64,000 bases of DNA, taken from positions 62,001-126,000 of IMG/VR virus record IMGVR_UViG_3300028676_000003; one strand, 5' to 3'. Made by a program: the position numbers and the translations under genes. The notes below the pieces were generated by a model. That model saw only the letters and a list, made by a program, of their open reading frames with translations. It did not search any database and had not been told where the DNA came from. How positions within the stretch are numbered: position 1 is the stretch's first letter; every line of letters begins with the position of its first letter. Positions 35,799 through 55,454 of the stretch are shown here, piece after piece.

Positions 35799-35812
35799 TT
35801 TTATCTTTTTAT

Positions 35813-35820
35813 AATAAATA
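35813..35820 (-). promoter_or_regulatory. Putative late promoter
   Basis: TATTTATT on minus strand, 14 nt before ATG. Confidence 0.6.
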
Positions 35821-35830
35821 TCTAAAAAGT

Positions 35831-40036: not shown

Positions 40037-40834
40037 TTATCCATTCTGTACTTCATACGTTATTTTTCTATCATTTGGAAAATAGTATTCTTTTTTAGCA
40101 GTCTGTAACCACCATCTAGCCTCAATTGGGTCAAGATTTTCTTTGTAGTCAGCAAATAATGAACCAACTCTTTGATTAACGTGTTTGTAACCGAATTTAG
40201 GGATAACCATAACCTTAACATCTTTGAATGTCATTCTTAATAAGAATTCATAAATGAATGTTAATTTGATACTTGGTTTGAATCCTCCGAACTCATCTAA
40301 CACTGATTTCTTAACAACCATTCCGTCAATATTGAAGTTTTGATAAGCTAATAAAGCTGTGTTATCTAATACTCCTAATTCATCAGAAAAACTGTTTGCC
40401 CATACTGCTTCATTAGTAAATCCTAAGAAGTTTCCTTCAGGGTCAACGTCAATGATAATCGGCATGAATAAATCGATGTTTGTATGTTTTGTTTTGTATT
40501 CTACTGCGTTTTTAATCCAAATGTTTGCGAATTCGTCATCGAACTCTAAGATGCTTAACCATTCAGTTTTTACATTCGCAACACCCAAGTTAACTTGAGA
40601 GGCAAAGTCTGTTGGACCATCATTTTGAATAACTCTAACTGAGTCTTTGTAATCACCAAAGTCAAATGAATCTAAATAGCTTACTAAATCACTCCCTGCT
40701 GGAACTACAATAAGTAATTCATCAGGTCTTACGATTTGTGATTTAACACTTGCAATTGCATTAGCGAACATTGGTTTTGTAACTTCGTTCAATTCATGAA
40801 CAGGAAGTATAATTGATATTTGTGTTTTTTCCAT
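40037..40834 (-). CDS. GT2 (GT-A) glycosyltransferase
   Basis: ISIILPVH, LEFDDE DxD-type motif. Confidence 0.85.
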   Translation of the reverse strand: MEKTQISIILPVHELNEVTKPMFANAIASVKSQIVRPDELLIVVPAGSDLVSYLDSFDFGDYKDSVRVIQNDGPTDFASQVNLGVANVKTEWLSILEFDDEFANIWIKNAVEYKTKHTNIDLFMPIIIDVDPEGNFLGFTNEAVWANSFSDELGVLDNTALLAYQNFNIDGMVVKKSVLDEFGGFKPSIKLTFIYEFLLRMTFKDVKVMVIPKFGYKHVNQRVGSLFADYKENLDPIEARWWLQTAKKEYYFPNDRKITYEVQNG

Positions 40835-40845
40835 TTGTTTATTTA

Positions 40846-42006
40846 TTATTTAGCTTCTGCTTTTGATGTTTTCTCTTTTAAAGCTTCCTCTAAAGTAGAT
40901 AATGTTTTTTTAAGCTCAACTAGTCTGTTTTCAACAAGAGTTGAATACGTTACCGTCATAGCTTCAACTTGATTTTCTTCAGTGTACTGACCTTTGCTTT
41001 CAAGAGCACCTTTAACTAAATCAGTTGGAACTCCATCTTCTAACCAAAGCTTCAAGTAAGTAGCAATCAATTCAGGAATGTTTGTAGTTGTATTTGTCCA
41101 AACTCCATTATTTTTGATTGTACCAACACCATTCTCATCAACTTCTTCCATCCATTCAGGAATAAGATTAGGTAATTTACCGATTACTGGTGTATTTGCT
41201 TCCATAGCCTCTAATGGGAATGTACCGAAACCTGAAGTATCGTCAATCCATACAGCTAAACAAGCTTTACCTAATTCTTCAGCAAATTGTTGTCTTGGTA
41301 GACCTCTTAATTCTCTGAAGGTAATCCATTTGTAGATTGGGTATTGTAAGTAGAATGACTTAGCAATCTTAGCCGCATCACTTTGATTTCTTGTGTGTAT
41401 CGCAACAACTGGAATCTTAGGTTTCTCGCTATCTTTGAAATAAGATGGGATAGAAACTGGAACAATGTGTGTTGCAATTGTTGGGAACAAGCTTGTTAAG
41501 TAATCTGCTTGTTTTTGACTTGTTGTAATTACATCATTGAAACCGAAGTCAGTTGTCCATCTTTTACCAATAGGTAATAATTCAAGCAAGTAATCATAAC
41601 TTTGAGAAATTACAACCTTTTTGCAAGGGAAACCTTTTACTTGGTCCATAATGTTTGAGAAAATCTCAGGGATAACAATAAAATCAGCTGGGCTAATGTT
41701 TAATTGTTGTGCTTCAATAGAGATGTGAGGCAAGTTTGCATATTCTTCACCTAACCATTCAGCGATACCTTGACCATCTTCATTTGCTCTTAATTTGTAG
41801 TCATTTTTTTCATGTAAAATCTTAGCTGAATATCCTAATTCATTAAGAATTTTTACGTGTTCGTAAATGTTAGCAATACCAGCCGTTGGGTTACCTTTGG
41901 TATCTAGAGTAAAAAAATATAGTGAGAAATCTTTATTTTTTAATTTATCGATAACTCCAGTCAATTGACCGATTTGTTCTTCGAATTGTTTTATTTGTTC
42001 TTCCAT
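40846..42006 (-). CDS. GT-B (GT4-like) glycosyltransferase
   Basis: GIANIYEHV..L, IVIPE, GFGTFPLEAM. Confidence 0.8.
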   Translation of the reverse strand: MEEQIKQFEEQIGQLTGVIDKLKNKDFSLYFFTLDTKGNPTAGIANIYEHVKILNELGYSAKILHEKNDYKLRANEDGQGIAEWLGEEYANLPHISIEAQQLNISPADFIVIPEIFSNIMDQVKGFPCKKVVISQSYDYLLELLPIGKRWTTDFGFNDVITTSQKQADYLTSLFPTIATHIVPVSIPSYFKDSEKPKIPVVAIHTRNQSDAAKIAKSFYLQYPIYKWITFRELRGLPRQQFAEELGKACLAVWIDDTSGFGTFPLEAMEANTPVIGKLPNLIPEWMEEVDENGVGTIKNNGVWTNTTTNIPELIATYLKLWLEDGVPTDLVKGALESKGQYTEENQVEAMTVTYSTLVENRLVELKKTLSTLEEALKEKTSKAEAK

Positions 42007-42029
42007 TTTTATGTTTATTGGATAATTAA

Positions 42030-42395
42030 TTATTCTGTTTCTATTTCTTTGATAATTCCATAAGAAATAAGGGTATTAAATGCTATTTTATAAGATAACC
42101 CTAATTTATCTAAAGCTCTGTCGGCACCTAACGTGTCATCAGTTTCTTCATCTACATCGTCCATTATTATTTCTAATAACATTCTAAGTGTATCGTACTT
42201 TCCACCATCCACTTCAAATCCTCTTTCTGTTAAGATTTCTGTCATCTCAGAGCTGACGATTTTTCCATGCTCATCTCTAAATGTTTTCACTGTTTTATGT
42301 GAAACCACATCTGTAGGTTTTGTATCACCTAATTTAATGGCTTTGCTAAAAGCCTCAAGGTCTATTGAATAAACCACTCCACCAAAATCAATCAT
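42030..42395 (-). CDS. Hypothetical protein
   Basis: 121-aa ORF in operon. Confidence 0.7.
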   Translation of the reverse strand: MIDFGGVVYSIDLEAFSKAIKLGDTKPTDVVSHKTVKTFRDEHGKIVSSEMTEILTERGFEVDGGKYDTLRMLLEIIMDDVDEETDDTLGADRALDKLGLSYKIAFNTLISYGIIKEIETE

Positions 42396-42398
42396 AAT

Positions 42399-43001
42399 TT
42401 AAATCTCTTCGTATGTCGTTATTTTTGTTGAAAGTATTCTGTTTCTAAGTTCTTCATCTTTGATGAAATCAAGAATAGAATCTATCTCATAATCAGCTAC
42501 AGAATCAGCGTTATATGACGCTTTTACCTTAACACTAATTTTACCGCTTGGCTTGTTTGCTAGGGCAATTGGATTGGCTGTGATTAGAACATCTGCATCT
42601 CCCCACTCTTCCTCATTGTGTTTAACAAATCTTAACTTGTCAATTCTACAACTTGTTTTTGATAAAAAGAAATACGTTGAAGGAATACTCTTGTCGATTT
42701 CTCTACTAACTAATTCAACTTCATGTTCTTCATCATCTTTCATATCCATGATAAAATGATTAAATTGGTTCATTAAACCATCTGACATTTGGTCGGCATG
42801 GCCGAATATTTCTAGAGGTGCTTCCAAATATATGAAAGAGTTAAGTCTGTTAATGTCATCAAACTTAAAGAACTCAATTAAATTAAAGTTTGTTACATCA
42901 CCTACTGTCAATTCTGTCGGCTCGACATACTTGTCATAAGTGTAAACTAACTGTTCAATAAAACCTCGTAAAACCTCATTAATGCTAATTGCTATTTTCA
43001 T
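42399..43001 (-). CDS. 5'(3')-deoxyribonucleotidase (HAD)-like protein with degenerate motif I
   Basis: KIAISINEVLR in place of DxDGVL; DVLITANP, YN near C-terminus. Confidence 0.6.
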   Translation of the reverse strand: MKIAISINEVLRGFIEQLVYTYDKYVEPTELTVGDVTNFNLIEFFKFDDINRLNSFIYLEAPLEIFGHADQMSDGLMNQFNHFIMDMKDDEEHEVELVSREIDKSIPSTYFFLSKTSCRIDKLRFVKHNEEEWGDADVLITANPIALANKPSGKISVKVKASYNADSVADYEIDSILDFIKDEELRNRILSTKITTYEEI

Positions 43002-43040
43002 AAACCCAATTTAAGACTGTAAGGCCCATAAGTAAAGTAA

Positions 43041-43916
43041 TTATCTAAATAAATCCGCTAATTTATCCCAAAAAGTTCTTTTTTTGATATTTTTAGGTTT
43101 AGATTCTATAATAATCACTTCTTTTTTCTTATAATCTTTGTGTTCAAATATTTGAATGAAGTATTTTGTTAGTCTATGTCTTACAACTTCATTCTCAGTA
43201 AACTCAACTACATTAACCCCTTCTTCAGGGTGTAACTTAGCCATTCTAACTAATTCAAACAAACAACTTGACTCAGGGTTTTTTAAATCGACCTGATTGC
43301 TATCACCTAATGCGATAACCTTTGTATTTTCAGCAAAACGAGTAAGAAGTGTTTTACCGTTGTTATCTGTTACGTTTTGAAACTCATCAAATAAAATGAT
43401 ACAGTTTGAAAGCGAACGTCCACGAATGCTTCCGAATACTTCCATCTTAACATATCCAGCATTGATTAGTTTTCCAGTTAATTCTTCTCCGATAAGCTTA
43501 TAGAAAGCATCTAAGAATGACATCATGATGAATTTAAGTTTATCTTTTTCATCACCTGGGAGTGTACCAAGGTCCTCATCTTTTAATTGAACAATAGACT
43601 TAACCAATTTGATTTCATGATATGTGTCAGGATTATTCTTTAAAAGAATAAGAGCTTCTGCAACACTTAAAAGAGTTTTACCAGTTCCTGCTGGCCCTGT
43701 ACAAATTGTAACATCTCCTTTTTTAATTGATTGTGTAAGCTTTTTTTGAACCTCATTTTTATGTTTCAAATCAATCTTAATTTGACTTAATAAATCTTCT
43801 TTACTAGAAACTTCTTGAGCTACTACTGCATCTGTTTTTTTAACCCTAGTAGTTCTTGTTGTTCCAGTTTTTGCTGTTGATGCCGACTTCGTTGTTGAAG
43901 ATGTTTTTCGTTGCAT
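43041..43916 (-). CDS. phoH: PhoH-family ATPase
   Basis: GPAGTGKT, SIRGRSL, ILFDEFQN, LTRF, GDSNQVD, VVRH. Confidence 0.95.
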   Translation of the reverse strand: MQRKTSSTTKSASTAKTGTTRTTRVKKTDAVVAQEVSSKEDLLSQIKIDLKHKNEVQKKLTQSIKKGDVTICTGPAGTGKTLLSVAEALILLKNNPDTYHEIKLVKSIVQLKDEDLGTLPGDEKDKLKFIMMSFLDAFYKLIGEELTGKLINAGYVKMEVFGSIRGRSLSNCIILFDEFQNVTDNNGKTLLTRFAENTKVIALGDSNQVDLKNPESSCLFELVRMAKLHPEEGVNVVEFTENEVVRHRLTKYFIQIFEHKDYKKKEVIIIESKPKNIKKRTFWDKLADLFR

Positions 43917-44565
43917 GTGTGTTGTTGTTAATTCTATTATGGTTATTGAAATAGTCTACTTTTTTGTTTTGAATATCACTATAATCAATCTTTTGTACCG
44001 TCATATTTGGGAAAAAACCATAAATATTATTTGTCTTTTGTAAATCAGCGTAATAACCATCAATCGGTTTCTCACGTTTGGTAGCCAATTCAAGAATCTT
44101 ATTAAATAAGGTATCTCTAATTACAACTCCTTCTAGAGCAAATGTATTATGAAGTCTCATAATCTTTTCATTCACTTGGTCAGGAATTCCACCGTATGTA
44201 TGATTACCACCGAAATAAATCATATCCCAATCACTTGGTACGCTATTGATGTACTCTTCTAAATTAGCGATTTCAGGCATAAAGTAAACATCATCTTCAA
44301 AAATAACTACAGAAGAATATCCTTTTTCGATTGCTTCAGTTATTATATTTATATGTGTTTCCATGATTCCTAACTCACCCTTAAGCAGATTTTCGTTGTA
44401 TGTAGTTGTTGACCAATCATATAACTTTCCATCAATTGCTTGATATCTTTCAATATCATCTAAATTATGCTTAGCAAATTCCTTTAAAGAATTTTTCCAT
44501 CTGTCAGGTCTTCTTTTTAAATTAACACAAAAAGCCTTATCAAAATATTTTGTTAATACACTCAT
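43846..44565 (-). CDS. GT25-family glycosyltransferase
   Basis: CVNLKRRPDRW, AIDG, GELG..ETH, IFEDDV, DWDMIYFG. Confidence 0.88.
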   Translation of the reverse strand: MSVLTKYFDKAFCVNLKRRPDRWKNSLKEFAKHNLDDIERYQAIDGKLYDWSTTTYNENLLKGELGIMETHINIITEAIEKGYSSVVIFEDDVYFMPEIANLEEYINSVPSDWDMIYFGGNHTYGGIPDQVNEKIMRLHNTFALEGVVIRDTLFNKILELATKREKPIDGYYADLQKTNNIYGFFPNMTVQKIDYSDIQNKKVDYFNNHNRINNNTHATKNIFNNEVGINSKNWNNKNY

Positions 44566-45494
44566 TATTTTTTCTCTTTATTCTCGTATTTAGTATCTAG
44601 TTTATCTTGTCTATATCCTTCCATGATATATTCACCGTTAGTTTTTACATCAGCAATGAACTTTACAACGTAGTGTCCATTATGTGTTACAATCTTGTCG
44701 AATACCAAATTGTTATATTCGTATAAATGATTGTTTGCCGCACCTTGGGTTTTATCAGTAACAAAACCAACCTCATCTAGTTCAAGCATTGTACCACCCA
44801 TTTGAGTGTTTTCAATTACTTTTTTAATATTTGAAATGAAGAACCTACTAGCTCTGTTGTATTCATCAGGGTATAGGCTAACATAAAATTCTAATAAGTG
44901 TTTTGTTTCATCTATCTTACGAATCTTAAGTGTTTTTGTATAGTCTTCCAAATAAAAGTTAGGAGCGTTGCTTCTTTTAATCTTGATTGGTCTTTCATTT
45001 TTATCTTGTACAAAATAATCATGTCCGCTAATCTCAGCACGTGTTACCTCACCAACATCTTCATTCACTGGTTTTTCTTCCAAATTAGAGATATCAAATG
45101 TTTCATGAACACTTTTACCAATCTCAGTATTATCTACGATTAAAACAGCTGGATATGGGTCAAAACTATCTAGATTAGGTTTTGTAATCTTTAATTTTTT
45201 ATCAGCCATTTTATAAATTGGGTTATCATTTTCATCATACCCTTCTAACTTGATGGTTTTACCTTCTGTTGCTTCCATAATCTTATACATTCTCCAACGT
45301 AAATCCATAACTTCTTGAGTTATCTCACCATTGATTAATGAATCAGATATCTTTCCTTGATTTAAACGAGTTGATTGGGTTGCATCTGTTACTAACCCTT
45401 CACCTGTTTGTGATAATGCATTCTTTTCTACGTTGCTTAACGCTACAGCCGCTACAGCCGCTTGTTTTTTAACCCATTTGGTAATTTTTCCCAT
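44565..45494 (-). CDS. Hypothetical protein
   Basis: 309-aa ORF coupled within cluster. Confidence 0.7.
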   Translation of the reverse strand: MGKITKWVKKQAAVAAVALSNVEKNALSQTGEGLVTDATQSTRLNQGKISDSLINGEITQEVMDLRWRMYKIMEATEGKTIKLEGYDENDNPIYKMADKKLKITKPNLDSFDPYPAVLIVDNTEIGKSVHETFDISNLEEKPVNEDVGEVTRAEISGHDYFVQDKNERPIKIKRSNAPNFYLEDYTKTLKIRKIDETKHLLEFYVSLYPDEYNRASRFFISNIKKVIENTQMGGTMLELDEVGFVTDKTQGAANNHLYEYNNLVFDKIVTHNGHYVVKFIADVKTNGEYIMEGYRQDKLDTKYENKEKK

Positions 45495-45495
45495 T

Positions 45496-46149
45496 TTAGT
45501 TGTGTTTTAAATAACTGCAATTCAAAAGATTGAAGTTATATGTATTGTAATTTGTTTTATGTTTTGTTAGAAGATATGGTAGACTCAATTGGTCTTGTAT
45601 TGAATACATTGCATTGTGGTAAAACCAATCTTTCATTAGATTATTATCTTTATCCTTGATTAATTCTTTTGAATACATAAAGCATCCGCAAGCAAATAAC
45701 TTATCATCTACGAATTCTTCATCCTGAGTGTATTTAAGCACTTGTTTATCCATATCCTCTCCTTGGTATCGACTAATCAAATAATTATCACCACGGGCCA
45801 TAAGATTGTTCATGAAGTCTAATTCTGATTGTATTGTATTTCTATAAGGATGATTGAATAAACATAAGTCATATCCTTCTATTCCTTTTAGTAGCTGTTC
45901 AATTATTCCATCATTTAGTGTAAACTTTGAATCGGCCCAAATATAATAATCATAATCTTCATCTAATTCCCATTCAAGCATCTTAGGAATCTTACCTTTG
46001 AGTCTTGAATGTAGACTAAGTGCTCTAGATGGTGTATTTGAATCATTATAAAGAACCACATCAACATTGTACTTAGCCAATTCTTCATGGTTATTAATTA
46101 TAAGTTGTGAATGTCCACCGAAAGCACCTGATATAAGTTTTATTTTCAT
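45496..46149 (-). CDS. DUF616/TOD1-MUCI70-like glycosyltransferase
   Basis: YYIWADS, FNHPYR..I..E, QDQLSLPY. Confidence 0.7.
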   Translation of the reverse strand: MKIKLISGAFGGHSQLIINNHEELAKYNVDVVLYNDSNTPSRALSLHSRLKGKIPKMLEWELDEDYDYYIWADSKFTLNDGIIEQLLKGIEGYDLCLFNHPYRNTIQSELDFMNNLMARGDNYLISRYQGEDMDKQVLKYTQDEEFVDDKLFACGCFMYSKELIKDKDNNLMKDWFYHNAMYSIQDQLSLPYLLTKHKTNYNTYNFNLLNCSYLKHN

Positions 46150-46703
46150 TAAAAGGTTATTTTAAAGACAATTTCTTTATTGTAACCAGTATCAGTATCA
46201 AGAGTTTCAACTTCTACCAATTTAGGATTAGCTATTTTTAAAATATCATCAAAAATATCCTTAGAAATAGCCAAATCAGGAACATCTACACCATGTTGTA
46301 AATTATGCGCTAATTCCTCTGTAGCTCCGTCAGCAAATGGTATAAATAATGTGATACATAATTTTTTTGTTGCGCTATTTAAAGCATTCGCAAATATTCT
46401 TTCCCATTCATAGTTATGTTCCAATACGTGTCTCATATGAATTCCTTCAACACTTGATTCATATTCACATAAATCAATGTGTTTTTTTGTTGCAAATGGA
46501 GTATCACTTCCATCGATACCAATAGCCTGTGGACAGAATCTAAGGAAACCACCACCACCTACTCCCCAATCTTCAATTGTTTCACAGTCAGCTAAAAAAT
46601 CAGCACCAATTTGGTACGTTGATGTTTCTCCATATTTGTATGAACTTGGTATTCCTGATTTTAAATCTTTATACCAATTGTCCCATTTTCCTACATTACT
46701 CAT
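46149..46703 (-). CDS. SAM-dependent methyltransferase-like protein
   Basis: IEDWGVGGGG, GIDGS, RHVLEHN. Confidence 0.75.
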   Translation of the reverse strand: MSNVGKWDNWYKDLKSGIPSSYKYGETSTYQIGADFLADCETIEDWGVGGGGFLRFCPQAIGIDGSDTPFATKKHIDLCEYESSVEGIHMRHVLEHNYEWERIFANALNSATKKLCITLFIPFADGATEELAHNLQHGVDVPDLAISKDIFDDILKIANPKLVEVETLDTDTGYNKEIVFKITF

Positions 46704-48018
46704 TTCTTTTTAATATTGTTAATCCGTTGTTATTTGTTAAGTCTTCTAGAATACTCCAATTGGTATTCTCAGCCAAGAAATCTTCCATAGCCGTTCTAAG
46801 TCCAAGCTTCGTTGATGATTGTCCTTTAATAATCTCACTTGCATGTTGATAGATTTGCTCATCAACTCTACCAAACGTAGTTGTATCATGAAGTATGATA
46901 TACTTAGATACATTACCTTCGTGAATTCTTAATTCTGCAATTAATTGATTGTAAGTGTGAAGTGTATCTATGAAAAGAAGCTCCGTTGGTTCAATTGTTA
47001 AATTAAGAGTATCTGCCAATACAAAAGAATGATTTAGTAATTGAGTACTTTCAGTCATTATTTGTTGTATTTCATGAGTTGATTGGATATCATAAGAGAT
47101 AAGTCTTTCAGGATTTGCCATTATAAAAGCAAGAGTCGAAGCTCCCCATCTAACACCCATTTCTGTTATGTGCTTACACTCTTCACCATATCTTTTAAGA
47201 ACTGGCATGTGTTCATAAATGTCTATACTCTGTGTTACATTTGGATTAACCAAAGAAACATTATATAGTTCTGTAATTCTATTGCTCATTGCGTTTTCAT
47301 TTGTTTTTGTAAATGTTAAAAACGTAGGTCTTAAATTTGAATATTCAAAGTTAGGTTTCAAATAATGTGGATTATTATTGTCAACATAAGCTCTGATATC
47401 TTCAACACCACTCGTTTTCATTGATTTTTTTGATTGACCTTCATAGTGTATGATAGGTGAGTTTAAAACATAGGCTAAGTTAAATCCTCTTTCGTAAATA
47501 GAATGAAAGATAAAATCATCACCACAATATGTTTTAATGTAGCTTGGTAGTGTTGGAAATAATGCATGTCTAAGACTGAAATCCCATCCTTGCATATTAA
47601 CAAACGGCTCAACTACTCTATAGTTTAATTGTGTTTGTTCTGAACTATAACTCATATGGTTAGTTGAATGTACTACGATACCAACATAAGGTTCTTTATC
47701 GAAAACCGCAATGGTTGATTCAACAAAGTTGCTACATAAATTAATATCGTTATTCAAGAAACATAAGTATTCATTCTTATAGGTTGCATGAAACCAAGAC
47801 CACACATGATTAAGTGGGATATTCTCAGCATTCCTAACTATTTCTACGTTTTCGTAGTCTATTGAATCTAAAAATTCGCTAGTTCCTTCTTCGGTTGAAG
47901 CTTGGTCAACCAAAACGATTTCAAAATCATCACTTGTTTGTGTTTGTAAGTCTTTCAAACAATCTCTAGTGAACTCAATGTTATCTAAATTCACTATTAA
48001 AATTTTTAGTTTTTTCAT
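46696..48018 (-). CDS. GT2 glycosyltransferase fused to a C-terminal methyltransferase (Methyltransf_24-like)
   Basis: VLVDQAS.E.T, FLNND, CGDD; then ITEMGVRWGAS, LLFIDTLH.Y, ILHDT. Confidence 0.82.
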   Translation of the reverse strand: MKKLKILIVNLDNIEFTRDCLKDLQTQTSDDFEIVLVDQASTEEGTSEFLDSIDYENVEIVRNAENIPLNHVWSWFHATYKNEYLCFLNNDINLCSNFVESTIAVFDKEPYVGIVVHSTNHMSYSSEQTQLNYRVVEPFVNMQGWDFSLRHALFPTLPSYIKTYCGDDFIFHSIYERGFNLAYVLNSPIIHYEGQSKKSMKTSGVEDIRAYVDNNNPHYLKPNFEYSNLRPTFLTFTKTNENAMSNRITELYNVSLVNPNVTQSIDIYEHMPVLKRYGEECKHITEMGVRWGASTLAFIMANPERLISYDIQSTHEIQQIMTESTQLLNHSFVLADTLNLTIEPTELLFIDTLHTYNQLIAELRIHEGNVSKYIILHDTTTFGRVDEQIYQHASEIIKGQSSTKLGLRTAMEDFLAENTNWSILEDLTNNNGLTILKRNE

Positions 48019-49694
48019 TATATAAGTTTTTTATAAATGTCAATTATCTCCTTAGCAACAACATCACTCTTAAATTTATCTAAGTCAGTTGGTACTTCAT
48101 GTAGTGTTTTTGATATTATATCACCAGTAGCGTTAACATTATATATCCAACCTTTTTTACCACATAACCATCCTTCAATAGTTGTTCTACCTAAAAGAAT
48201 TCCAGCTGTCTCATCACATTGGTGAATAAACTTTTCGATGTTAGGTGTTGGCTCAAAATATGTCACGTGGTCATTTTGTGCAATGTATGCATCTAGCGTA
48301 GCTTCACGTTTTTTACCAACAATCCATAATTCACCACCTTCTTCTTTGGTTGTGTTAATTAAGTCTACTAGGGTTTGGATTCTCAAGAAATCAATAGTTC
48401 CAACGAATAGTGTTCTTTTCTTGGTTCTTTTTTCTGTTAGTTTAACTTCTTTAAATCTTGTTGTGTCAATTGGATTATAGATAATATCAATCATCTCACT
48501 ATCAATCCCAAATTTATCAATAAGATAGTCTTTGATTTCAGGACGAATAGCAATGTATTTTTTTACATTATCAGTAATAAAAGGTTCTTCCATTGGAATT
48601 ACTTCTGAGTGGATTGAAGTTACTATCGGAGTATTTGGATAGAACTTAGCCAAGTGTTCAGTAATTGGTTTGTGGTTTGAATGGATTACATCGAATTCTA
48701 CATTAGAAACTTTATAAAGAGTCGCTTCTTGTGATGGAATTTCACCTTGTGGTGTCTTAAGTAACCATTTACCATCCCCTAACTTATACCCAGGAGGTGA
48801 TTTCAAGTCATATGTCTTGATTCCTATACCATTAGCAATCTTATTAAGTGGATTACCCAAGTTGGCCCAAATACTAACCTCACAACCTTGTTTCATAAGT
48901 TGTTTAGCCAATTCAAAAACATATAATTCTGAACCAGTATGTGATTGTAAACTTAAACAACCAATAAGGACCTTAAGCTTCTCACCTTTACGAATAACTC
49001 TTTTTATTTCAGCTGGCAATACACTAGCATATTTTTCACTAAAATTAATACGGTTTGTTTCCCAAGAATCATTTGTTTCACCAATTGATTTATGGTTTAT
49101 TCTGATTTGAGTTGAAACTCCTACCTTAACACCTTCCAAGTAATTATCAAATGAGAATGTAACATCATAGAAATGGAATCCTTCAACTGATTCATCAAAG
49201 GTTGCTTTGATACGTGTTTTGTCAACTGCGAAGAATACACCATCAACATTTACAACTTCTTCCAAGTGTTGCCCTAAGTCATCAGAATAAGCTGATAACC
49301 AAGATTTACCACCACTAGTATGTTGTACTCTACCAAACATTTTTTTAGGGTCTTCCCACCATTTACCTGAAGAAGGCATAGCTTTACTTCCAGCAACACC
49401 AATTATTCCAAATTCAGGGTTCTTTTCAAACTGTTTAAGTAATTTATTACCCCATTGCTTAGTATCAATAGAAATATCATCATGACAAAATACAACTATA
49501 TCGTATTTCGCTTGATTTAAGCCTTGATTATATGCTGAGGTTAGTGATTGTCCACCATTGAAATATGTTGACGCAGGGTCGTTGTTATTGATGATTTCAA
49601 TAACTTCAATGTGTTTATGTAGACCAGAAGATTTGATTATATGGTCAATGTGTGGTTTATTATGTTCTTTTGTGCAATATACAACTGTTATCAT
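48018..49694 (-). CDS. GT-A plus GT-B double glycosyltransferase
   Basis: AYNQGL..A, VFCHDD, FHFYD (GT-A); TGSELYVFELA, GRTTIEGW (GT-B). Confidence 0.82.
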   Translation of the reverse strand: MITVVYCTKEHNKPHIDHIIKSSGLHKHIEVIEIINNNDPASTYFNGGQSLTSAYNQGLNQAKYDIVVFCHDDISIDTKQWGNKLLKQFEKNPEFGIIGVAGSKAMPSSGKWWEDPKKMFGRVQHTSGGKSWLSAYSDDLGQHLEEVVNVDGVFFAVDKTRIKATFDESVEGFHFYDVTFSFDNYLEGVKVGVSTQIRINHKSIGETNDSWETNRINFSEKYASVLPAEIKRVIRKGEKLKVLIGCLSLQSHTGSELYVFELAKQLMKQGCEVSIWANLGNPLNKIANGIGIKTYDLKSPPGYKLGDGKWLLKTPQGEIPSQEATLYKVSNVEFDVIHSNHKPITEHLAKFYPNTPIVTSIHSEVIPMEEPFITDNVKKYIAIRPEIKDYLIDKFGIDSEMIDIIYNPIDTTRFKEVKLTEKRTKKRTLFVGTIDFLRIQTLVDLINTTKEEGGELWIVGKKREATLDAYIAQNDHVTYFEPTPNIEKFIHQCDETAGILLGRTTIEGWLCGKKGWIYNVNATGDIISKTLHEVPTDLDKFKSDVVAKEIIDIYKKLI

Positions 49695-49752
49695 GATTTT
49701 AATTTTTCATAATAATAGTATTTAAATATCAAAGTGTAAATGGTTTATAAAC

Positions 49753-49783
49753 AAAAAAACCCTACTCGTTAAAGTAGGGTTTT
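49753..49783 (-). terminator. Intrinsic terminator (guaC)
   Basis: CCCTACT/AGTAGGG plus T run on minus strand. Confidence 0.8.
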
Positions 49784-49786
49784 AAT

Positions 49787-50779
49787 TTATTTCTTATATC
49801 TTTGGTAAGCATTATCTGTAATTTTGATAATATCTGCCATTCCAATAAATTCATCAAGAGTTTTTGTGTTTGAATAACTCATGGCCGAGCGTAGGTAATC
49901 TTCAAAATTACTAGCCCATTGTCTTAGGTTATATTCAGCTTTTCTAAATCGAATAACACCTTCAGAAGAAATTAATTCTTCTTTTCCCCATTCTTTTTGA
50001 ACTTCTTTGGTGCTCATACCTCTAAACTTCTTATAAACAGGTAGGTTATTGTTATAACACCATCTTGCAAAGCTTTGTTTAATCTTTATGCATTTGAAAA
50101 GATAATTATCACCACATGAATCAATAGCTTTGTTGAAGATGCTTCCTACCATTACGTAATCAGCTCCAAGTGCTAGTGCTTTGATAATATCGCTGTAGTT
50201 TTGCATCCCACCATCTGCGACTATCTTAGCTGGTTTATCTAAACTACAAGAAATTTCGTAACACTCTCGGATAAGACTTGCCATTGGATATCCAACACCA
50301 GTATGTACAGTAGTACTACATCCACCGCCATTTCCGATTCCAACCCTAACATAATCAGCACCAGCATCAGAAAGAACCTTGTATGTTTCAGGGTTAGCAA
50401 CATTACCAACCATAAGGGTCATTTCAGGATATTTAGCTTTTAATGCTTTGGTCATTTCCACTAGGGTTGCCATGTGTCCATTTGCGATATCAATAAGATA
50501 CATACCTTTTTGGTTAAGATTTCCTTTTCTAGCTTGTTTCTCAATTTCTTGTAAAGAATATGATTCAAATCCAGTTAAGTTCATTTCACCTCTTGGAGTA
50601 CAAGTAATAATCTTTAACCCTTTGTAAATGTATTTGTTATCTTTACTAATAACAGTGTCCATTGGTGCTGTAATTAAAGGTAAAAACCCATCGTGAAATG
50701 GGTTTATATCTTTTCGAGAATTAATATTAGATATCTTAGCTGGTTTAATTAAAATATCGTTAAAATCGAATTTGTTCAT
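49787..50779 (-). CDS. guaC: GMP reductase / IMPDH-family protein (no CBS domain)
   Basis: FNDILI.P, TAPMDT, IDIANGH, VGIGNGGGCST, IVADGG, ALALGAD.VM.G. Confidence 0.8.
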   Translation of the reverse strand: MNKFDFNDILIKPAKISNINSRKDINPFHDGFLPLITAPMDTVISKDNKYIYKGLKIITCTPRGEMNLTGFESYSLQEIEKQARKGNLNQKGMYLIDIANGHMATLVEMTKALKAKYPEMTLMVGNVANPETYKVLSDAGADYVRVGIGNGGGCSTTVHTGVGYPMASLIRECYEISCSLDKPAKIVADGGMQNYSDIIKALALGADYVMVGSIFNKAIDSCGDNYLFKCIKIKQSFARWCYNNNLPVYKKFRGMSTKEVQKEWGKEELISSEGVIRFRKAEYNLRQWASNFEDYLRSAMSYSNTKTLDEFIGMADIIKITDNAYQRYKK

Positions 50780-50794
50780 TAAAATATTTGTGTT

Positions 50795-51385
50795 TTATTT
50801 TGTTCCTGTACTTCCAAATCCACCAGCTCCACGCTCAGTATCATTAGATATTTCGTCTATTTTGTTTAAATTAATTGTGTTCTTAGCTGTTACAGTTGCT
50901 ACTACTGCTTGTGCAATTCTTTCACCATGCTTGATTATGAATTCTTGCTTACCATGATTGATAAGGATAACCTTAACTTCTCCACGATAATCTGCATCAA
51001 CCGTCCCAGGTGTATTCAACACAGTAATACCATGCTTTGCCGCTAGTCCGCTTCTTGGTCTAACTTGAATCTCAAAATTAGGTGGTAATTCAAAGTATAA
51101 ACCTGTCGGAATAAGCTTTATTTCACCACTTTCAAGTATGATATCATCTTCACCTAAATCAGCTCTTAAATCGAAGCCTGATGCTCCGTCAGTTGCATAT
51201 TCAGGGTCAGGGTTATTTGATTTATTTACGAAGTTAACCTTCATTCTAAAATCATTTGATACGTTTACTATGTTTCCATTCATAGCTCCACCGAATTCTT
51301 TGTCAAAATCTGCTTGACTGTAAGGATTAGAAGGGTCCGCAATTTCGAGAACCCTCTCCTTCATTTTTTGAATGTCAAATGTCAT
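50795..51385 (-). CDS. dut: dUTP pyrophosphatase
   Basis: [34 protein letters not shown]. Confidence 0.97.
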
Positions 51386-51948
51386 TATTTACTTGCTTTT
51401 TCGTTTTTGATAGCGAACAAGTTAGCAACCTTTAATAAGTCACCCATAGTTGAGTTATGATACTCTACCATTTTGTCGTCCTCTCTATCAAACATTATGA
51501 TTGCTTGGTATTCCTCTTCTGTAAAAGTAACACCGTGAGCTGAAGCATAAAAAATGCTACGGTCACTAACTCTCATAGAAACTAAATCCTCATTGAACTT
51601 GTACATTTGTCCAAGATTTTTTTTATGCCATTCAGATTCATTCTCAATGTATAATTTTGCTTTACCAATTTGGTGTAAAAGTGCAACCTTCAATAATGAA
51701 GATTGGTCAACTCTTTCATCTGCTGGTAAAGCGTTATTAAACATCACTGCATACTTAGCAACATTTAATAAGTGAGCAATAAGGCCACCTTCAAATGCGT
51801 TATGTAATTTTGTTACAGTAGATGCTGGAGCTTTAATGAAATCTGTTCCTAAGAAAGCTTGTAATTCATCTGTCATGAATCCTAAATTTGTTGCTGTCTC
51901 AAAGTATTTTTTTGTATTAGCAACGATTTTTGTTTGGTCTAAAGACAT
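51385..51948 (-). CDS. YhaM-like HD protein with HD changed to HQ
   Basis: [22 protein letters not shown]; start set at ATG 51948 because the track start overlaps the promoter. Confidence 0.7.
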
Positions 51949-51979
51949 GTCTTTATGTATTATCTTCTCGTTATTTGTA

Positions 51980-52011
51980 CAAATATACACCTTTATTTTG
52001 ACTAAAGCAAA
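51980..52011 (-). promoter_or_regulatory. Bacteroidota-type sigma70 promoter (HD-dut-guaC)
   Basis: TTTG-N20-TATATTTG. Confidence 0.8.
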
Positions 52012-52023
52012 TAAATTTTAAAA

Positions 52024-52464
52024 TTATTCACCTAAAACTCTAGTTTGTCCGAATCCGTGTTTAAACTCATCTTTAAATCTAACTGCATCCATTTTTGGTT
52101 CAGGGTCAGCTTTTAGTTTAGGTTCATCACTTGATTTAAGAACACTCAACAAATCAGCTTTTAATGATTTGATTGTATCTTCAAATTGTTTCTTTTGATT
52201 AGAAAGAATATTCTTGATTTGGTCTTCTTCAGGTGTTTTGTACTTATCATCAACTCTGTCCATAAGTTCTTTGATGTGAGATGTTTTTGTTGTATCATCT
52301 AAATCAATTGTATACTTAGGTTTAACGTTGTCAGTTAACAATTGGTTAACTCCAACAAATTTTTCAGGTGCTTTTTTCTCACCATCACTAGTTGAATTTG
52401 CTTTATCCTCTTTCAAGGCTTTAGCTAGGAATTCGAAAACTAGAATTAAATCATCTTGTTTCAT
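52024..52464 (-). CDS. Hypothetical protein
   Basis: 146-aa ORF. Confidence 0.65.
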   Translation of the reverse strand: MKQDDLILVFEFLAKALKEDKANSTSDGEKKAPEKFVGVNQLLTDNVKPKYTIDLDDTTKTSHIKELMDRVDDKYKTPEEDQIKNILSNQKKQFEDTIKSLKADLLSVLKSSDEPKLKADPEPKMDAVRFKDEFKHGFGQTRVLGE

Positions 52465-52467
52465 AAT

Positions 52468-53694
52468 TTATTTTTTTAAAAGGCTCAAGTATAAGTCTCT
52501 TCTTTGTTCAGTTACTTTATCCATAGAATATGTGTCTTTAACTGTTTCGAAAAGATTTTCTTGAAGTGTTGTTATAATTTCAGGATTATTGATTAATTTC
52601 TTAATCGCAGTATACCAATCCTTGTTATTTTTTTTGCTGTCAATCAAGATACCATTTGCTGTTGTATCAAAACCACCACCATATTGTATAGCGTTTTTAA
52701 GGTCAATTTGGTATGGCCCGAAATCTTGTGCAATTAATGCTTTTTTATGGAAACCAGCTTCAATAACCTTCAACTGACTCTTAACCTTGTTGAATACGTT
52801 TTCTTCAAGTGGTGCCAAAGAAATATCAAATAAGTTATAGTTTGTTGCATATGTTGAGATTGGTTTTGTCCAAACTCTACGGTATGCTTCATTGGTAGTA
52901 TCAAATTCTTGGTCTTGCGTGAATTTTAACAAATAATTTTTATATTCAGGGCTAACAGTAGAATAGTTGTCTGTAAAGATTTGCTCATAACGGAACCAAA
53001 CACTTTCTTTTGGTGTAATTTGTCTAGTTGTTTGTTGCTTAGTAATACTATCAATTGTTGTGTGTGTTCCTCTAACATCAAATCCGCAAAGTACAAATTG
53101 TACCTTATCTAGTAAATTATCAGCTCTTAGTTTACCAACAACTCCTTGAAGGATTTCTAAATCTTTTAAGTGAGATGAACCACCTAACCAACCAATTCTG
53201 ATTCTATCAGAAGGTTCAACGTTAGAAATAAATTGTTTTTCTTTAGGGTCGATAGCATTAGGTAAAACGTAAACATTTTTGTTTACTTTTCTAATTTCAT
53301 CAGCGAAGAATGGTGTTGTTGTTGTAACATTTCTAGCAGAACGAATATTATCAAGAATCTTTTTATCTAATTCAGCATTTTTAATAAGGTGATAAGCAGG
53401 GTGGTGTAACCCAGGAGCCCAATAATCATCCAAATCCATAATCGTTACAATTCCAAGACCGTCTAATTTTTTCAATAGATTTTCCATCTGCTCATAAGAA
53501 CCTAATGCTCTATGGTAGTGAATAATATCATATTGTTTTAAGAAAACGTCATCATCCAAGTTTATATCATATTCGATATCGATGTGAAATTCATCAGGAT
53601 ATTTATTTTCTAATGCAATGTGTGGGTTAGTACTTCTGTAGTAAGAAACACCTGTTCTATCGCTAGGAACTACTAGCACTTTTATTTTTTTCAT
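52468..53694 (-). CDS. GT-B glycosyltransferase
   Basis: GVSYYRS..PH, DLDDYW, LPNAID, IGWLGGSSH..DL, DISLAPL..N.FN..KS.LK..E. Confidence 0.85.
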   Translation of the reverse strand: MKKIKVLVVPSDRTGVSYYRSTNPHIALENKYPDEFHIDIEYDINLDDDVFLKQYDIIHYHRALGSYEQMENLLKKLDGLGIVTIMDLDDYWAPGLHHPAYHLIKNAELDKKILDNIRSARNVTTTTPFFADEIRKVNKNVYVLPNAIDPKEKQFISNVEPSDRIRIGWLGGSSHLKDLEILQGVVGKLRADNLLDKVQFVLCGFDVRGTHTTIDSITKQQTTRQITPKESVWFRYEQIFTDNYSTVSPEYKNYLLKFTQDQEFDTTNEAYRRVWTKPISTYATNYNLFDISLAPLEENVFNKVKSQLKVIEAGFHKKALIAQDFGPYQIDLKNAIQYGGGFDTTANGILIDSKKNNKDWYTAIKKLINNPEIITTLQENLFETVKDTYSMDKVTEQRRDLYLSLLKK

Positions 53695-53758: not shown

Positions 53759-53786
53759 AAAAAAGGAGCCTAAATAGCTCCTTTTT
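53759..53786 (-). terminator. Intrinsic terminator
   Basis: GGAGC/GCTCC stem flanked by A and T runs. Confidence 0.8.
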
Positions 53787-53796
53787 GTTAATTATT

Positions 53797-54429
53797 TTAA
53801 ATTGTTTTCTTTTTCGTTGGGATTATTCCTTCTTTTATCAGCGTAGTAATTGTTTTTTTAATTGTTTCTTCTGTTAAGGTTTTGTCATAAATCTGTTTAA
53901 AAAACGTTGAAATACCTTCATTTATCATATCTTTAAGTTCTGTCTTGCTGATAGTTATCATTTCTGAATTCCCTCTTGGTTGTTGAATGTTCTCTCTTAT
54001 CGGCTGTTGTCTTGGTGGCAGAGCCTGTGGAGCTTGTTTTGTATCATTTAAATTCTTACGAGTCATTCTAGCAATCTGTTCCACTGAAACACCACCAGTC
54101 ATACTTACTTGCGGAATTGGTTTAGCTATCATAATTGCTTTGATTGCATCAGGCAATCTAGAATTCTGTACCATTTCAGCTGTATAATCAGTAGGTGCTT
54201 GATATTCTGTTTCGTTAGGGTTACTTGGTAAATAACTTTCATAAACAGGTTCTCTCTCATCATTTTCATTGTAAAATCCTGAATCATAGATATTACTATA
54301 AGATTCATTCATGCTTTCTCTCCTAGTAGGAGTTGGCATGTCACCCTCGACCTTTTGCATAACCTGTTTTGATTTGGCTAAAAGTCCTTGTAGAGCGGAT
54401 AAATTTACTGGTTGTGGCATTCCATCCAT
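53797..54429 (-). CDS. Hypothetical protein (late operon)
   Basis: 210-aa Pro/Gln-rich ORF before terminator. Confidence 0.7.
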   Translation of the reverse strand: MDGMPQPVNLSALQGLLAKSKQVMQKVEGDMPTPTRRESMNESYSNIYDSGFYNENDEREPVYESYLPSNPNETEYQAPTDYTAEMVQNSRLPDAIKAIMIAKPIPQVSMTGGVSVEQIARMTRKNLNDTKQAPQALPPRQQPIRENIQQPRGNSEMITISKTELKDMINEGISTFFKQIYDKTLTEETIKKTITTLIKEGIIPTKKKTI

Positions 54430-54435
54430 ATTATT

Positions 54436-54981: not shown

Positions 54982-54993
54982 ATATTATTTTTA

Positions 54994-55452: not shown

Positions 55453-55454
55453 AA

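What the first reader, a model, noticed from the sequence alone, without database searches (positions are those of the whole stretch)
40037..53694. About seven glycosyltransferase genes (eight domains) plus two methyltransferase domains in one phage block
Seen: GT2 (40037), GT-B (40846), GT25 (43846), DUF616-like (45496), MTase (46149), GT2-MTase (46696), GT-A plus GT-B (48018) and GT-B (52468), with no nucleotide-sugar synthesis or flippase gene in the window. ThyA has the canonical dUMP Asn, so no hydroxymethyl-C handle for T4-style DNA glucosylation is evident here. Established: some mycobacteriophages glycosylate capsid and tail proteins with their own GTs. Inference: a multi-step, methyl-capped glycan built on virion proteins from host sugar nucleotides; host-surface remodelling or DNA glycosylation are alternatives.
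Basis: partly seen in the sequence, partly recalled or inferred. Interest (0 to 1): 0.6.

Follow-up and report, generated by a model that had tools for sequence, protein, structure and literature searches.

The report
Jumbo-phage glycan assembly gene block
A 368-kb phage from peat, probably infecting Bacteroidota, carries four conserved sugar-adding enzyme genes plus a strain-specific set of extra ones, with no membrane export genes; they probably build a methylated sugar coat on a phage-made target, but that target is not proven.

Summary
Window 40037-53694 (minus strand) encodes seven glycosyltransferase (GT) genes with eight GT domains and two probable SAM-methyltransferase domains. They are interleaved with PhoH, dUTPase, an HD protein and a GMP-reductase-family gene. 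Every GT2 and GT4 Pfam match in the 368,549-bp genome lies in this block.

Comparison with 68 related viral loci shows two layers:
- Four GT genes (52468, 48018, 40846, 40037) are core to the clade, found in 45 of 48 records or more.
- GT25, the DUF616-like GT, the GT2-MTase and the small MTase are accessory. They sit in a slot that is 3 bp to 9 kb long in relatives. There it holds other GTs, methyltransferases and sugar-nucleotide enzymes.

No initiating phosphoglycosyltransferase, flippase or polytopic membrane protein occurs in the locus, this genome or 48 relative records. The only thymidylate synthase homologue is canonical. No C5 DNA methylase or TET/JBP match was found.

Best reading: a cytoplasmic glycan assembly line acting on a phage-made acceptor, most likely virion proteins (confidence about 0.4). 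Remodelling of host envelope glycans is the main rival. DNA glycosylation is unlikely.

Core GTs in large Bacteroidota phages were already noted in the "moraphage" paper, without a function. I rate this a new member of a known kind.

The parts
52468..53694 (-). Core GT-B (GT4-like retaining fold), first gene of an operon with the HD protein, dUTPase and GMP-reductase-family gene
   Evidence: phrog_7162 E 5.5e-41. AF2 pLDDT 86; Foldseek hits MshA, BshA and PglA, with T4 alpha-GT only at rank 27. Homologues at 49-78% identity in 63 related loci. 26% identity to phi92 gp164.
48018..49694 (-). Core two-domain GT: N-terminal GT-A (Glyco_tranf_2_5, 'HDD' motif) fused to C-terminal GT-B (Glyco_transf_4)
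   Evidence: Pfam E 4.6e-33 and 1.1e-15. 68 related viral loci at 40-67% identity. Among 185,579 species genomes, the full-length fusion occurs only on one 2.5-kb MAG contig that also carries a homologue of 44565.
46696..48018 (-). Accessory GT2 fused to a Methyltransf_24-like C-terminal module
   Evidence: PF00535 E 1.7e-10; PF13578 E 0.0094, below cut-off. The C-terminal module recurs fused to GT31, GT25, GT32, GT29, Fringe, DUF616, GT1, FkbM and acetyltransferase domains. Among the 68 loci it is found only here and in the identical copy L013.
46149..46703 (-). Accessory small protein, probable class I SAM methyltransferase
   Evidence: No Pfam hit. Protein-atlas neighbours are Methyltransf_23/11 families, scores 0.95-0.99. 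GxGxG-like motif. Only in this genome and L013.
45496..46149 (-). Accessory TOD1/MUCI70 (DUF616)-like GT
   Evidence: PF04765 E 1.4e-7. Found in 2 of the 68 loci.
44565..45494 (-). Conserved protein of unknown function that borders the variable slot; not a GT
   Evidence: No Pfam or PHROG hit. AF2 pLDDT 65; no PDB match; one uncharacterised myovirus protein in BFVD. Present in 17 loci, 3-15 bp after the 48018 homologue in 11 of them.
43846..44565 (-). Accessory GT25
   Evidence: PF01755 E 2e-10; phrog_2835. Found in 7 of 48 relative records and in none of the 4 complete ones.
43041..43916 (-). PhoH-like ATPase (the listed ORF overlaps the GT25 gene by 71 nt, so the real start is probably downstream)
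   Evidence: PF02562 E 1.8e-48, domain from residue 50.
40846..42006 (-). Core GT-B
   Evidence: PDB 8xsg AmGGT E 9.7e-8. Found in 45 of 48 relative records at 41-78% identity, including all 4 complete genomes.
40037..40834 (-). Core GT2, directly downstream of 40846 here; beside its homologue in most relatives (about 1 kb further in two records)
   Evidence: PF00535 E 2.4e-8. Found in 45 of 48 relative records at 44-75% identity.
49787..51990 (-). GMP-reductase/IMPDH-family gene, dUTPase and HD protein, in the same operon as the 52468 GT
   Evidence: Pfam. dUTPase neighbours the GTs in 66 loci and the HD protein in 22.
53760..53786 (-). Intrinsic terminator-like hairpin separating the late-promoter unit 55898..53797 from the GT operon
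   Evidence: 11-pair stem followed by a T run.
49756..49783 (-). Intrinsic terminator-like hairpin between 49787 and the 48018 operon
   Evidence: 12-pair stem followed by a T run.
53797..56371 (-). Five small conserved genes of unknown function, diverging from the first tail-fibre gene
   Evidence: The ATATTTATA motif found upstream of terminase and fibre genes lies 24 nt upstream of 55898. No family hits. Conserved in 13-40 loci.
14662..15780 (+). Canonical thymidylate synthase, the only TS homologue in the genome
   Evidence: NF002496 349 bits against a cut-off of 325. PPCH Cys, PFNIASY Asn and TS C-terminus. Single PF00303 match.

Best explanation
The block is a phage-encoded glycan assembly line that needs no membrane machinery of its own.

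Four clade-core GT genes, with five GT domains, probably lay down a conserved inner glycan: 52468 (GT-B), 48018 (GT-A plus GT-B), 40846 (GT-B) and 40037 (GT2). A strain-specific cassette probably extends and methylates it: GT25, a DUF616-like GT, a GT2-MTase fusion and a small MTase.

Donors would be host sugar nucleotides. A phage RmlD elsewhere in the genome may contribute to dTDP-rhamnose supply.

The acceptor is inferred to be a phage-made cytoplasmic molecule. The most likely candidates are virion surface proteins of the head or the large fibre set encoded next to the block. This would be analogous to chlorovirus, mimivirus and mycobacteriophage virion glycosylation.

Shown here: the enzyme families, the core-plus-variable architecture, the lack of membrane components, the canonical thymidylate synthase. 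Inferred: the order of action, the donors, the acceptor.
For: Enzyme identities.

GT genes are confined to this block.

Core versus accessory layers:
- Core genes occur in 45-68 relatives.
- GT25 occurs in 7 of 48 records. The other accessory genes occur only here.
- The slot after the 48018 homologue is 3-15 bp in 11 loci, 2.5 kb here, and 3.1, 6.2, 7.9 and 9.1 kb elsewhere.

Slot content in relatives:
- GT2, GT11, GT32-like and GT1-like GTs.
- FkbM and other methyltransferases.
- GDP-mannose dehydratase, RmlD-like reductases, DegT, UDP-GlcNAc 2-epimerase and a cytidylyltransferase.
- In the complete relative behind L065, 10 of 10 slot genes are glycan-related.

No membrane machinery:
- No block protein that matches a GT or methyltransferase family has a predicted TM segment.
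- 0 of 675 downstream ORFs in relatives have three or more TM segments.
- Bac_transf and Wzx families are absent from this genome and from 48 relative records totalling about 5.9 Mb.

The core fusion GT is absent from bacterial isolate genomes.

The block lies between the capsid genes and a run of Ser/Thr-rich fibre genes.

The only PDB relative of 40846 is AmGGT, whose top-ranked BLAST homologues are the Actinobacillus Agt glycosyltransferases.
Against: - No acceptor was identified. There are no collagen-like repeats and no notable Ser/Thr-rich extension on the capsid protein. N-x-S/T sequons are not enriched. No GT41/NGT-type initiating enzyme was found.
- The GT operons lack the late-type ATATTTATA motif seen upstream of terminase and fibre genes, both here and in relatives.
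- The 52468 GT shares an operon with nucleotide-metabolism genes.
- The GT families and the PHROG category ('moron, auxiliary metabolic gene and host takeover') fit host envelope work equally well.
- The cryo-EM paper on phi92, a phage that carries a distant 52468 homologue, never uses the word 'glycan' in its main text.
Confidence: 0.42

Rival explanations
1. Host envelope glycan remodelling. The soluble phage GTs and methyltransferases act at the inner face of the membrane on host undecaprenyl-linked LPS, capsule or protein-O-glycan intermediates. The host's own flippase and ligase export the altered glycan. This changes the infected cell surface, for example to exclude superinfecting phages.
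For: - GT2, GT4 and GT25 here, and GT11 plus nonulosonate, fucose and rhamnose pathway genes in relatives, are typical of O-antigen, capsule and Bacteroidota O-glycan loci.
- There are weak NCBIfam similarities to LPS galactosyltransferase, HpsN and TuaG.
- PHROGs files two of the GTs as moron, auxiliary metabolic gene and host takeover.
- The same idea is the standard, though untested, reading of cell-wall gene clusters in T4-like cyanophages (PMC12801897).
- The GT operons lack the late-type promoter motif.
Against: - No initiating transferase, flippase or any polytopic membrane protein occurs in the locus in 67 relatives, in 48 relative records or in this genome.
- Four GT genes are conserved at 41-78% identity across a deep clade whose hosts probably differ in surface glycans. 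This points to a conserved, phage-supplied acceptor.
- The core fusion GT is not found in bacterial isolate genomes.
Confidence: 0.3
2. DNA hypermodification. The GTs glycosylate a modified pyrimidine in phage DNA to evade restriction, as in the T-even phages, the SP-15/YerA41/Carin-5 group, or the methylase plus dioxygenase plus GT clusters.
For: - The 52468 fold also resembles T4 alpha-glucosyltransferase, at rank 27.
- This GT is co-operonic with dUTPase, an HD protein and a GMP-reductase-family gene, and the link to dUTPase is conserved in 66 loci.
- Phages are known to put di- and trisaccharides on DNA and to encode sugar-nucleotide genes for it (bioRxiv 10.1101/2023.12.21.572611; PMC13326640; PMC12686479).
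Against: - The only TS homologue is a canonical thymidylate synthase here. All five large relatives checked have one TS gene; it is intact with 276-355 Pfam bits in four and split into pieces in G005.
- No C5 DNA methylase was found. No TET/JBP match was found either, but the control for that search was silent.
- Eight GT domains plus methylation far exceed any DNA glycan in the papers read.
- Identical DNA of the 5.7-kb stretch laid (44300-50000) was recovered without differences from four ordinary shotgun peat metagenomes. Oligosaccharide-modified Carin-5 and YerA41 DNA resists standard sequencing.
- phi92-like phages, which carry the homologous GT, are exceptionally sensitive to restriction systems (PMC8594841).
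Confidence: 0.07
3. No single pathway. The core GTs and the accessory cassette serve different targets, for example some act on virion proteins and others on host glycans or small molecules. They are merely co-located in a hyperplastic region.
For: - The block is split into at least three transcription units by strong terminators.
- It is interleaved with unrelated genes.
- The accessory genes have a different evolutionary history from the core genes.
Against: - In relatives the slot holds coherent sets of sugar-nucleotide enzymes, GTs and methyltransferases, as expected for one glycan.
- All GT2 and GT4 matches in the genome are confined to this block.
Confidence: 0.15

Closest known systems
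'Moraphages': large aquatic phages predicted to infect Bacteroidota, with four core GT orthologous groups (Arch Virol 2025, PMC12619734)
   Same: - Large phages with T4-like morphogenesis genes and predicted Bacteroidota hosts.
- Core ClpA-like ATPase and PhoH.
- Exactly four GT groups in the core genome. Here four GT genes are core across 48 records.
- The function is left open in the paper as well.
   Different: - Membership was not tested, because I had no sequences from the paper.
- This genome is larger (368 kb against a maximum of 307 kb). It has an aminoacyl-tRNA-synthetase-like gene and no DnaK.
- In the passages read, the paper does not mention the variable cassette, the sugar-nucleotide genes in the slot or the lack of membrane machinery.
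Giant-virus autonomous glycosylation: the chlorovirus PBCV-1 capsid glycans including the GT-GT-methyltransferase protein A064R, and the Megavirinae fibril glycosylation clusters (from my own knowledge, not from a paper read here)
   Same: - Soluble virus-encoded GTs, sugar-nucleotide enzymes and methyltransferases with no membrane or export genes.
- Cluster content differs between related viruses.
- A GT fused to a methyltransferase domain.
   Different: - Those systems have glycans demonstrated on capsid or fibril proteins. Here nothing is demonstrated.
- The host is a bacterium.
- No sequence relationship was tested.
Mycobacteriophage virion O-glycosylation (Freeman et al. 2023, cited in PMC12619734)
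   Same: Phage-encoded GT2-type enzymes acting in the cytoplasm on phage structural proteins.
   Different: - Those phages have one to three GTs and use C-terminal extensions of the capsid and tail-tube subunits as acceptors.
- No such extension was seen here.
- This block has seven GT genes, and relatives add sugar-nucleotide pathways.
Cell-wall/LPS gene clusters of T4-like cyanophages (P-SSM2, S-SCSM1, S-SCSM2R; PMC12801897)
   Same: Large T4-like phages with up to 13 GTs (GT2, GT11, GT25 and others) plus sugar epimerases and rhamnose-pathway genes. The function is untested.
   Different: - Different phage lineage and host.
- The cyanophage set is reported to include a polysaccharide export gene (pgaA).
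- A core-plus-variable architecture is not mentioned in the passages of that paper that I read.
Phage DNA glycosylation systems (T4 alpha/beta-GT; methylase plus 5mYOX plus GT clusters; TS-homologue plus arabinosyltransferases; SP-15/YerA41/Carin-5)
   Same: GT-B and GT-A enzymes derived from LPS or teichoic-acid enzymes. These systems are sometimes accompanied by phage sugar-nucleotide genes.
   Different: No enzyme that would create the hydroxyl handle was found.

Membership tests
Wzx/Wzy- or ABC-transporter-dependent surface polysaccharide (O-antigen or capsule) locus | Initiating phosphoglycosyltransferase (Bac_transf or WecA type) | tested here: not met
   PF02397 is absent from this genome and from 48 relative records, while the controls matched. 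No polytopic WecA-like protein occurs among the locus ORFs.
Wzx/Wzy- or ABC-transporter-dependent surface polysaccharide (O-antigen or capsule) locus | Flippase, polymerase or other polytopic membrane protein in the locus | tested here: not met
   PF01943 is absent. 0 of 675 ORFs downstream of the core GT in 67 relatives have three or more TM segments. The only multi-TM proteins of this genome that I examined are an ABC permease component, a bestrophin and a coiled-coil protein, all elsewhere.
Wzx/Wzy- or ABC-transporter-dependent surface polysaccharide (O-antigen or capsule) locus | Several GTs plus sugar-nucleotide synthesis genes, variable between strains | tested here: met
Phage DNA glycosylation system | An enzyme that makes 5-hydroxymethyl or 5-hydroxy pyrimidine (TS-homologue hydroxymethylase or hydroxylase, or C5-methylase plus TET/JBP dioxygenase) | tested here: not met
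   There is one TS homologue. It passes the NCBIfam thymidylate synthase equivalog cut-off and keeps the Cys, the Asn and the TS C-terminus. PF00145 is absent. PF12851 is absent, but its control was silent, so that part is inconclusive.
Phage DNA glycosylation system | Non-canonical glycosylated base in virion DNA | not testable with these tools
   Indirect only: identical DNA of the 5.7-kb stretch laid (44300-50000) was recovered without differences from standard shotgun metagenomes.
Virion protein glycosylation (mycobacteriophage type) | Phage GT genes beside structural genes | tested here: met
   The block lies between the capsid gene (28626-30452) and the tail-fibre genes (from 56433).
Virion protein glycosylation (mycobacteriophage type) | Acceptor segment on capsid or tail proteins (Ser/Thr-rich C-terminal extension) | tested here: inconclusive
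   No such extension on the capsid protein. The fibre proteins are about 22% Ser+Thr overall, but no specific motif stands out. N-x-S/T sequons are not enriched.
Virion protein glycosylation (mycobacteriophage type) | Glycan detected on virion proteins | not testable with these tools
   The phage is known only from metagenomes.
Giant-virus-type autonomous glycosylation cluster | Soluble GTs, sugar-nucleotide enzymes and methyltransferases, no membrane components, and content that differs between related viruses | tested here: met
   In this genome the sugar-nucleotide part is reduced to a distant RmlD.
HMW1C/NGT-Agt cytoplasmic N-glycosylation of adhesins | GT41 N-glycosyltransferase that initiates on N-x-S/T | tested here: not met
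   PF13844 is absent from this genome and from 7 large relatives. Sequons are not enriched. Only 40846 resembles the AmGGT (Agt-like) elongating enzyme.
Moraphage lineage (PMC12619734) | Four core GT groups, a ClpA-like ATPase, PhoH, T4-like morphogenesis genes and a predicted Bacteroidota host | tested here: inconclusive
   All listed hallmarks are present. No sequence from the paper could be compared.

The most novel reading that the evidence does not exclude
The locus is a phage counterpart of an O-antigen locus for the virion itself. A conserved four-gene core primes head or fibre proteins. A hypervariable, horizontally exchanged cassette of GTs, methyltransferases and sugar-nucleotide enzymes then gives each strain of these Bacteroidota jumbo phages its own methylated glycan coat. 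This would be the bacterial-virus equivalent of the clade-specific glycan fibrils of giant viruses.
Probability: 0.3. Interest if true: 0.75.

Novelty: new member of a known kind. Interest (0 to 1): 0.5.

Why it matters
Phage GT clusters are usually assigned by habit to DNA protection or host-surface change, and that assignment is rarely tested. This clade offers a clean test case:
- four vertically inherited GT genes
- a swappable cassette
- no export genes
- no route to a modified base

If the product sits on virions, glycan coats with strain-level diversity would be a general feature of large phages, not only of mycobacteriophages and giant viruses. That would bear on phage adsorption, stability in peat and water, recognition by grazers, and immune recognition of therapeutic phages.

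The promiscuous methyltransferase-like module fused to many GT families may also be a useful marker for methylated glycans in metagenomes.

Tried and rejected
- **Near-identical DNA in cultured phages:** none found. The 48018 fusion has no tblastn match in 50,697 phage records.
- **44565 as an eighth GT or as the acceptor:** no family hit, a mediocre model and no structural match. It stays unknown.
- **Sequence matches to solved structures:** none for 52468, 48018, 46696 or the C-terminal half of 46696.
- **Pairwise comparison of the two MTase candidates with bona fide methyltransferases of L065:** one weak match (E 0.1) and one with nothing.
- **T4-type late promoter TATAAATA:** over-represented (23 matches against 9.4 expected), but mostly as its reverse complement upstream of plus-strand genes. 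This led to two motifs: ATATTTATA, and a Bacteroidota-type TTTG-N20-TACCTTTG. Neither precedes the GT operons, here or in 53 relatives. Expression timing therefore could not be used to pick the acceptor.
- **HMW1C/NGT-type N-glycosylation of the YadA-like fibres:** no GT41 and no sequon enrichment.
- **Collagen-like acceptors for the GT25:** none found.
- **Reads:** only assembled contigs were served, all identical. They gave no strain variants of the cassette and no RNA.
- **Paralogy:** there is no BLASTP-detectable paralogy between block proteins and the rest of the genome.
- **Not run:** Complex prediction, because no specific binding pair is claimed. The large representative search was also not used.

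Full report
**Context.** The window is bases 62,001-126,000 of a 368,549-bp IMG/VR virus record that CheckV rates 100% complete. Its GC content is 33.6%.

The phage has a T4-type portal, major capsid protein and large terminase. Its capsid protein is nearest to Flavobacterium phage immuto and to uncultured huge phages, at about 42-44% identity over part of its length.

Upstream of about 50-77 genes lies TTTG-N20-TACCTTTG. From my own knowledge this is the Bacteroidota sigma-A promoter form (-33 TTTG, -7 TAnnTTTG), so a Bacteroidota host is likely. Identical DNA occurs in four peat metagenome runs from different studies.

The genome has 537 plus-strand and 86 minus-strand ORFs by my simple caller. 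Window 30990-56371 is by far the largest minus-strand block, with 34 genes. It sits between the capsid gene (28626-30452) and a long run of fibre genes that starts at 56433. Those fibre genes carry a Peptidase_S74 chaperone domain and YadA-head repeats, and several of them are about 22% Ser+Thr.

**The observation.**
- Five GT domains pass Pfam cut-offs.
- 52468 is a GT-B by PHROG profile and by fold.
- 40846 is a GT-B by similarity to the retaining glucosyltransferase AmGGT and by motif.
- All five GT-A-type proteins keep an acidic DxD-like motif: FDDE, EDD, DEDYD, NND and HDD.
- The two methyltransferase domains are probable, not certain.

All PF00535 and PF13439 matches in the whole genome lie inside this 13.7-kb stretch, and PF00534 matches nothing. 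No block protein that matches a GT or methyltransferase family has a predicted membrane segment.

**Core and cassette.** The 48018 protein recovered 68 related viral loci at 40-67% identity, plus one identical copy. Synteny by tblastn gives a shared backbone:
- a fibre gene on the opposite strand
- five small genes
- the 52468 GT-B
- the HD protein (in some loci)
- dUTPase
- the 48018 GT-A/GT-B fusion
- a variable slot
- 44565
- PhoH
- 42399 and 42030
- the 40846 GT-B
- the 40037 GT2

Searches of 48 whole relative records found both 40846 and 40037 in 45 of 48. That includes all four records that are at least 96% complete. The two genes lie side by side in most of them and about 1 kb apart in two. 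GT25 occurs in only 7 of 48. The GT2-MTase, the small MTase and the DUF616-like GT occur only here and in the identical copy.

The slot between the 48018 and 44565 homologues is 3-15 bp in 11 loci, 2.5 kb here, and 3.1, 6.2, 7.9 and 9.1 kb elsewhere. The 675 ORFs downstream of the core GT in relatives fall into 205 clusters.

A Pfam census of 60 cluster representatives found:
- GT2 in six
- FkbM methyltransferase in five
- GDP-mannose 4,6-dehydratase in four (best E 1.6e-125)
- SDR epimerases and RmlD-like reductases
- DegT aminotransferases
- GT11
- UDP-GlcNAc 2-epimerase
- a cytidylyltransferase

The largest cluster, 29 ORFs in 25 loci, is represented by a GT11 match. In the complete 362-kb relative behind L065, all ten slot genes are glycan genes: four GTs, three methyltransferases and three sugar-nucleotide enzymes.

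This genome has lost or never had that part. Its only sugar-nucleotide enzyme is RmlD, at genome position 272,893-273,747.

**What is missing.** Three absences matter.
- No initiating phosphoglycosyltransferase and no Wzx flippase occur in this genome or in 48 relative records. The control genomes matched in both searches.
- None of the 675 locus ORFs in relatives has three or more hydrophobic segments.
- The three multi-TM proteins of this genome that I examined are an ABC permease component, a bestrophin and a coiled-coil protein, all far from the block.

The pathway as encoded is therefore soluble. The full-length 48018 fusion is not found in any isolate among 185,579 species genomes. It occurs there only on one 2.5-kb MAG contig that also carries a homologue of 44565. 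Seven other MAG contigs have only the GT-B half.

**DNA as target.** The only TS homologue passes an NCBIfam thymidylate synthase equivalog cut-off. It keeps the catalytic Cys, the dUMP Asn and the TS C-terminus, and is closest to S. aureus and L. casei TS.

All five large relatives checked also have one TS gene; it is intact and high-scoring in four and split in the fifth. No C5 methylase was found. The TET/JBP search was negative, but its control was silent.

Recent work shows that phages can put diverse glycans on DNA. In each case this starts from a hydroxymethyl or hydroxyl pyrimidine made by a methylase plus dioxygenase, or by a TS homologue. Oligosaccharide-modified DNA such as that of Carin-5 resists ordinary sequencing. 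Here, identical DNA of the 5.7-kb stretch laid (44300-50000) comes out of ordinary metagenomes.

phi92-like coliphages carry a four-GT cluster that includes a 26%-identical homologue of 52468. They are exceptionally sensitive to restriction systems (PMC8594841). I rate DNA glycosylation at about 0.07.

**Virion or host surface.** The evidence does not settle this.

For a phage-made acceptor:
- The pathway is soluble.
- The GT core is deep and vertically inherited, which implies a conserved acceptor across hosts that probably differ.
- The core fusion is absent from bacterial isolates.
- The block lies between the head and fibre genes.
- The architecture closely resembles giant-virus glycosylation clusters.

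For the host surface:
- The enzyme families and sugar pathways are those of O-antigen, capsule and Bacteroidota O-glycan loci.
- The host's own export machinery could be used.
- The GT operons are not in the late-promoter class.

On that last point, the ATATTTATA motif precedes terminase, fibre and other plus-strand genes, and also the first gene of the block (55898). Two strong terminators (53786-53760 and 49783-49756) then isolate the GT operons. Neither GT operon has that motif or the strong host-type motif, here or in relatives. A weak TAnnTTTG-like element (TATATTTG) precedes 52468. Early or middle expression fits all hypotheses.

I found no acceptor signature.

**Comparison with known work.** The closest published description is the moraphage lineage (PMC12619734). 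Those phages have predicted Bacteroidota hosts, T4-like morphogenesis genes, a ClpA-like ATPase and PhoH as core genes, and four core GT groups, with the function left open.

The present clade has exactly four core GT genes, a ClpB-like ATPase (10591-13113) and PhoH. It is probably the same or a sister lineage, but I could not compare sequences.

What this analysis adds:
- the core-plus-cassette architecture
- the sugar-nucleotide content of the slot in relatives
- the clade-wide absence of membrane machinery and of a DNA handle
- the promiscuous methyltransferase-like module

**Verdict.** The block is a new member of a known kind, and of moderate interest.

Noticed in passing
Whole genome; in the window, for example upstream of 2082, 9758 (minus), 13113 (minus), 31645 (minus) and 32578 (minus): A TTTG-N20-TACCTTTG(TA) motif lies 25-65 nt upstream of about 50-77 genes, including the ClpB-like gene. 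It fits the Bacteroidota sigma-A promoter consensus (from my own knowledge), so it serves as a host clue and a probable early-gene marker.
   Followed up: partly
Window, for example upstream of 20592, 24521, 26456, 56433, 60962 and (minus strand) 56371, 39243, 35798: A second motif, ATATTTATAA, lies about 20-40 nt upstream of start codons of terminase, fibre and other genes. It is probably the phage's late promoter. It is the reverse complement of the T4 late-promoter sequence TATAAATA.
   Followed up: partly
Window 14662-15780; relatives L079-L084: The thymidylate synthase has two insertions (about residues 150-177 and 228-260) relative to bacterial TS. In relative G005 the TS match is split into four pieces with stops between them. 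In G015 a second TS match lies in the same 404-aa frame, and in G033 the 431-aa frame matches only TS positions 1-228. This looks like introns, inteins or homing-endonuclease insertions.
   Followed up: no
Window 10591-13113 (minus): A full-length ClpB/ClpA-type double AAA+ chaperone (840 aa) is encoded by the phage, downstream of a host-type promoter motif.
   Followed up: no
Genome 265,468-273,747 (outside the window; locus L072): RmlD (dTDP-4-dehydrorhamnose reductase, E 8e-95) lies directly after a 422-aa class I aminoacyl-tRNA-synthetase-like protein. An ADP-ribosylglycohydrolase is nearby. Elsewhere the genome encodes a bestrophin-like channel and an ABC permease component.
   Followed up: partly
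Window 46696-47331 (C-terminal half of the 46696 protein): In metagenome proteins this roughly 190-aa module is fused to many different partners: GT31 (Galactosyl_T and Fringe), GT25, GT32, GT29, DUF616, GT1, FkbM, hexapeptide acetyltransferases and DUF5672. Only some copies are recognised as Methyltransf_24.
   Followed up: partly
Window 39308-40036 (minus): A 242-aa protein with a weak Sigma70 region 2 match sits directly after the last core GT. It could be a phage sigma factor like T4 gp55.
   Followed up: no
Window 34392-38863 (minus): The downstream part of the minus-strand block has late-type promoter motifs. It includes a protein (35831-36817) with a weak match to the baseplate hub/tail lysozyme PHROG, so the block mixes structural-like genes with the GT genes.
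   Followed up: no
Locus L076 (Escherichia phage phi92, 102,200-105,376): phi92 and its relatives carry four adjacent annotated GT genes (gp163-166) between the endolysin and DNA polymerase genes. gp164 is a distant homologue of 52468. Their function appears to be unstudied.
   Followed up: partly
Window 4287-5696: A 469-aa phage protein with C-terminal leucine-rich repeats.
   Followed up: no
Genome ends: The last 100 bases of the record repeat bases 47-146 of its start. This suggests a circularly closed or terminally redundant assembly, although IMG/VR labels the record linear.
   Followed up: no
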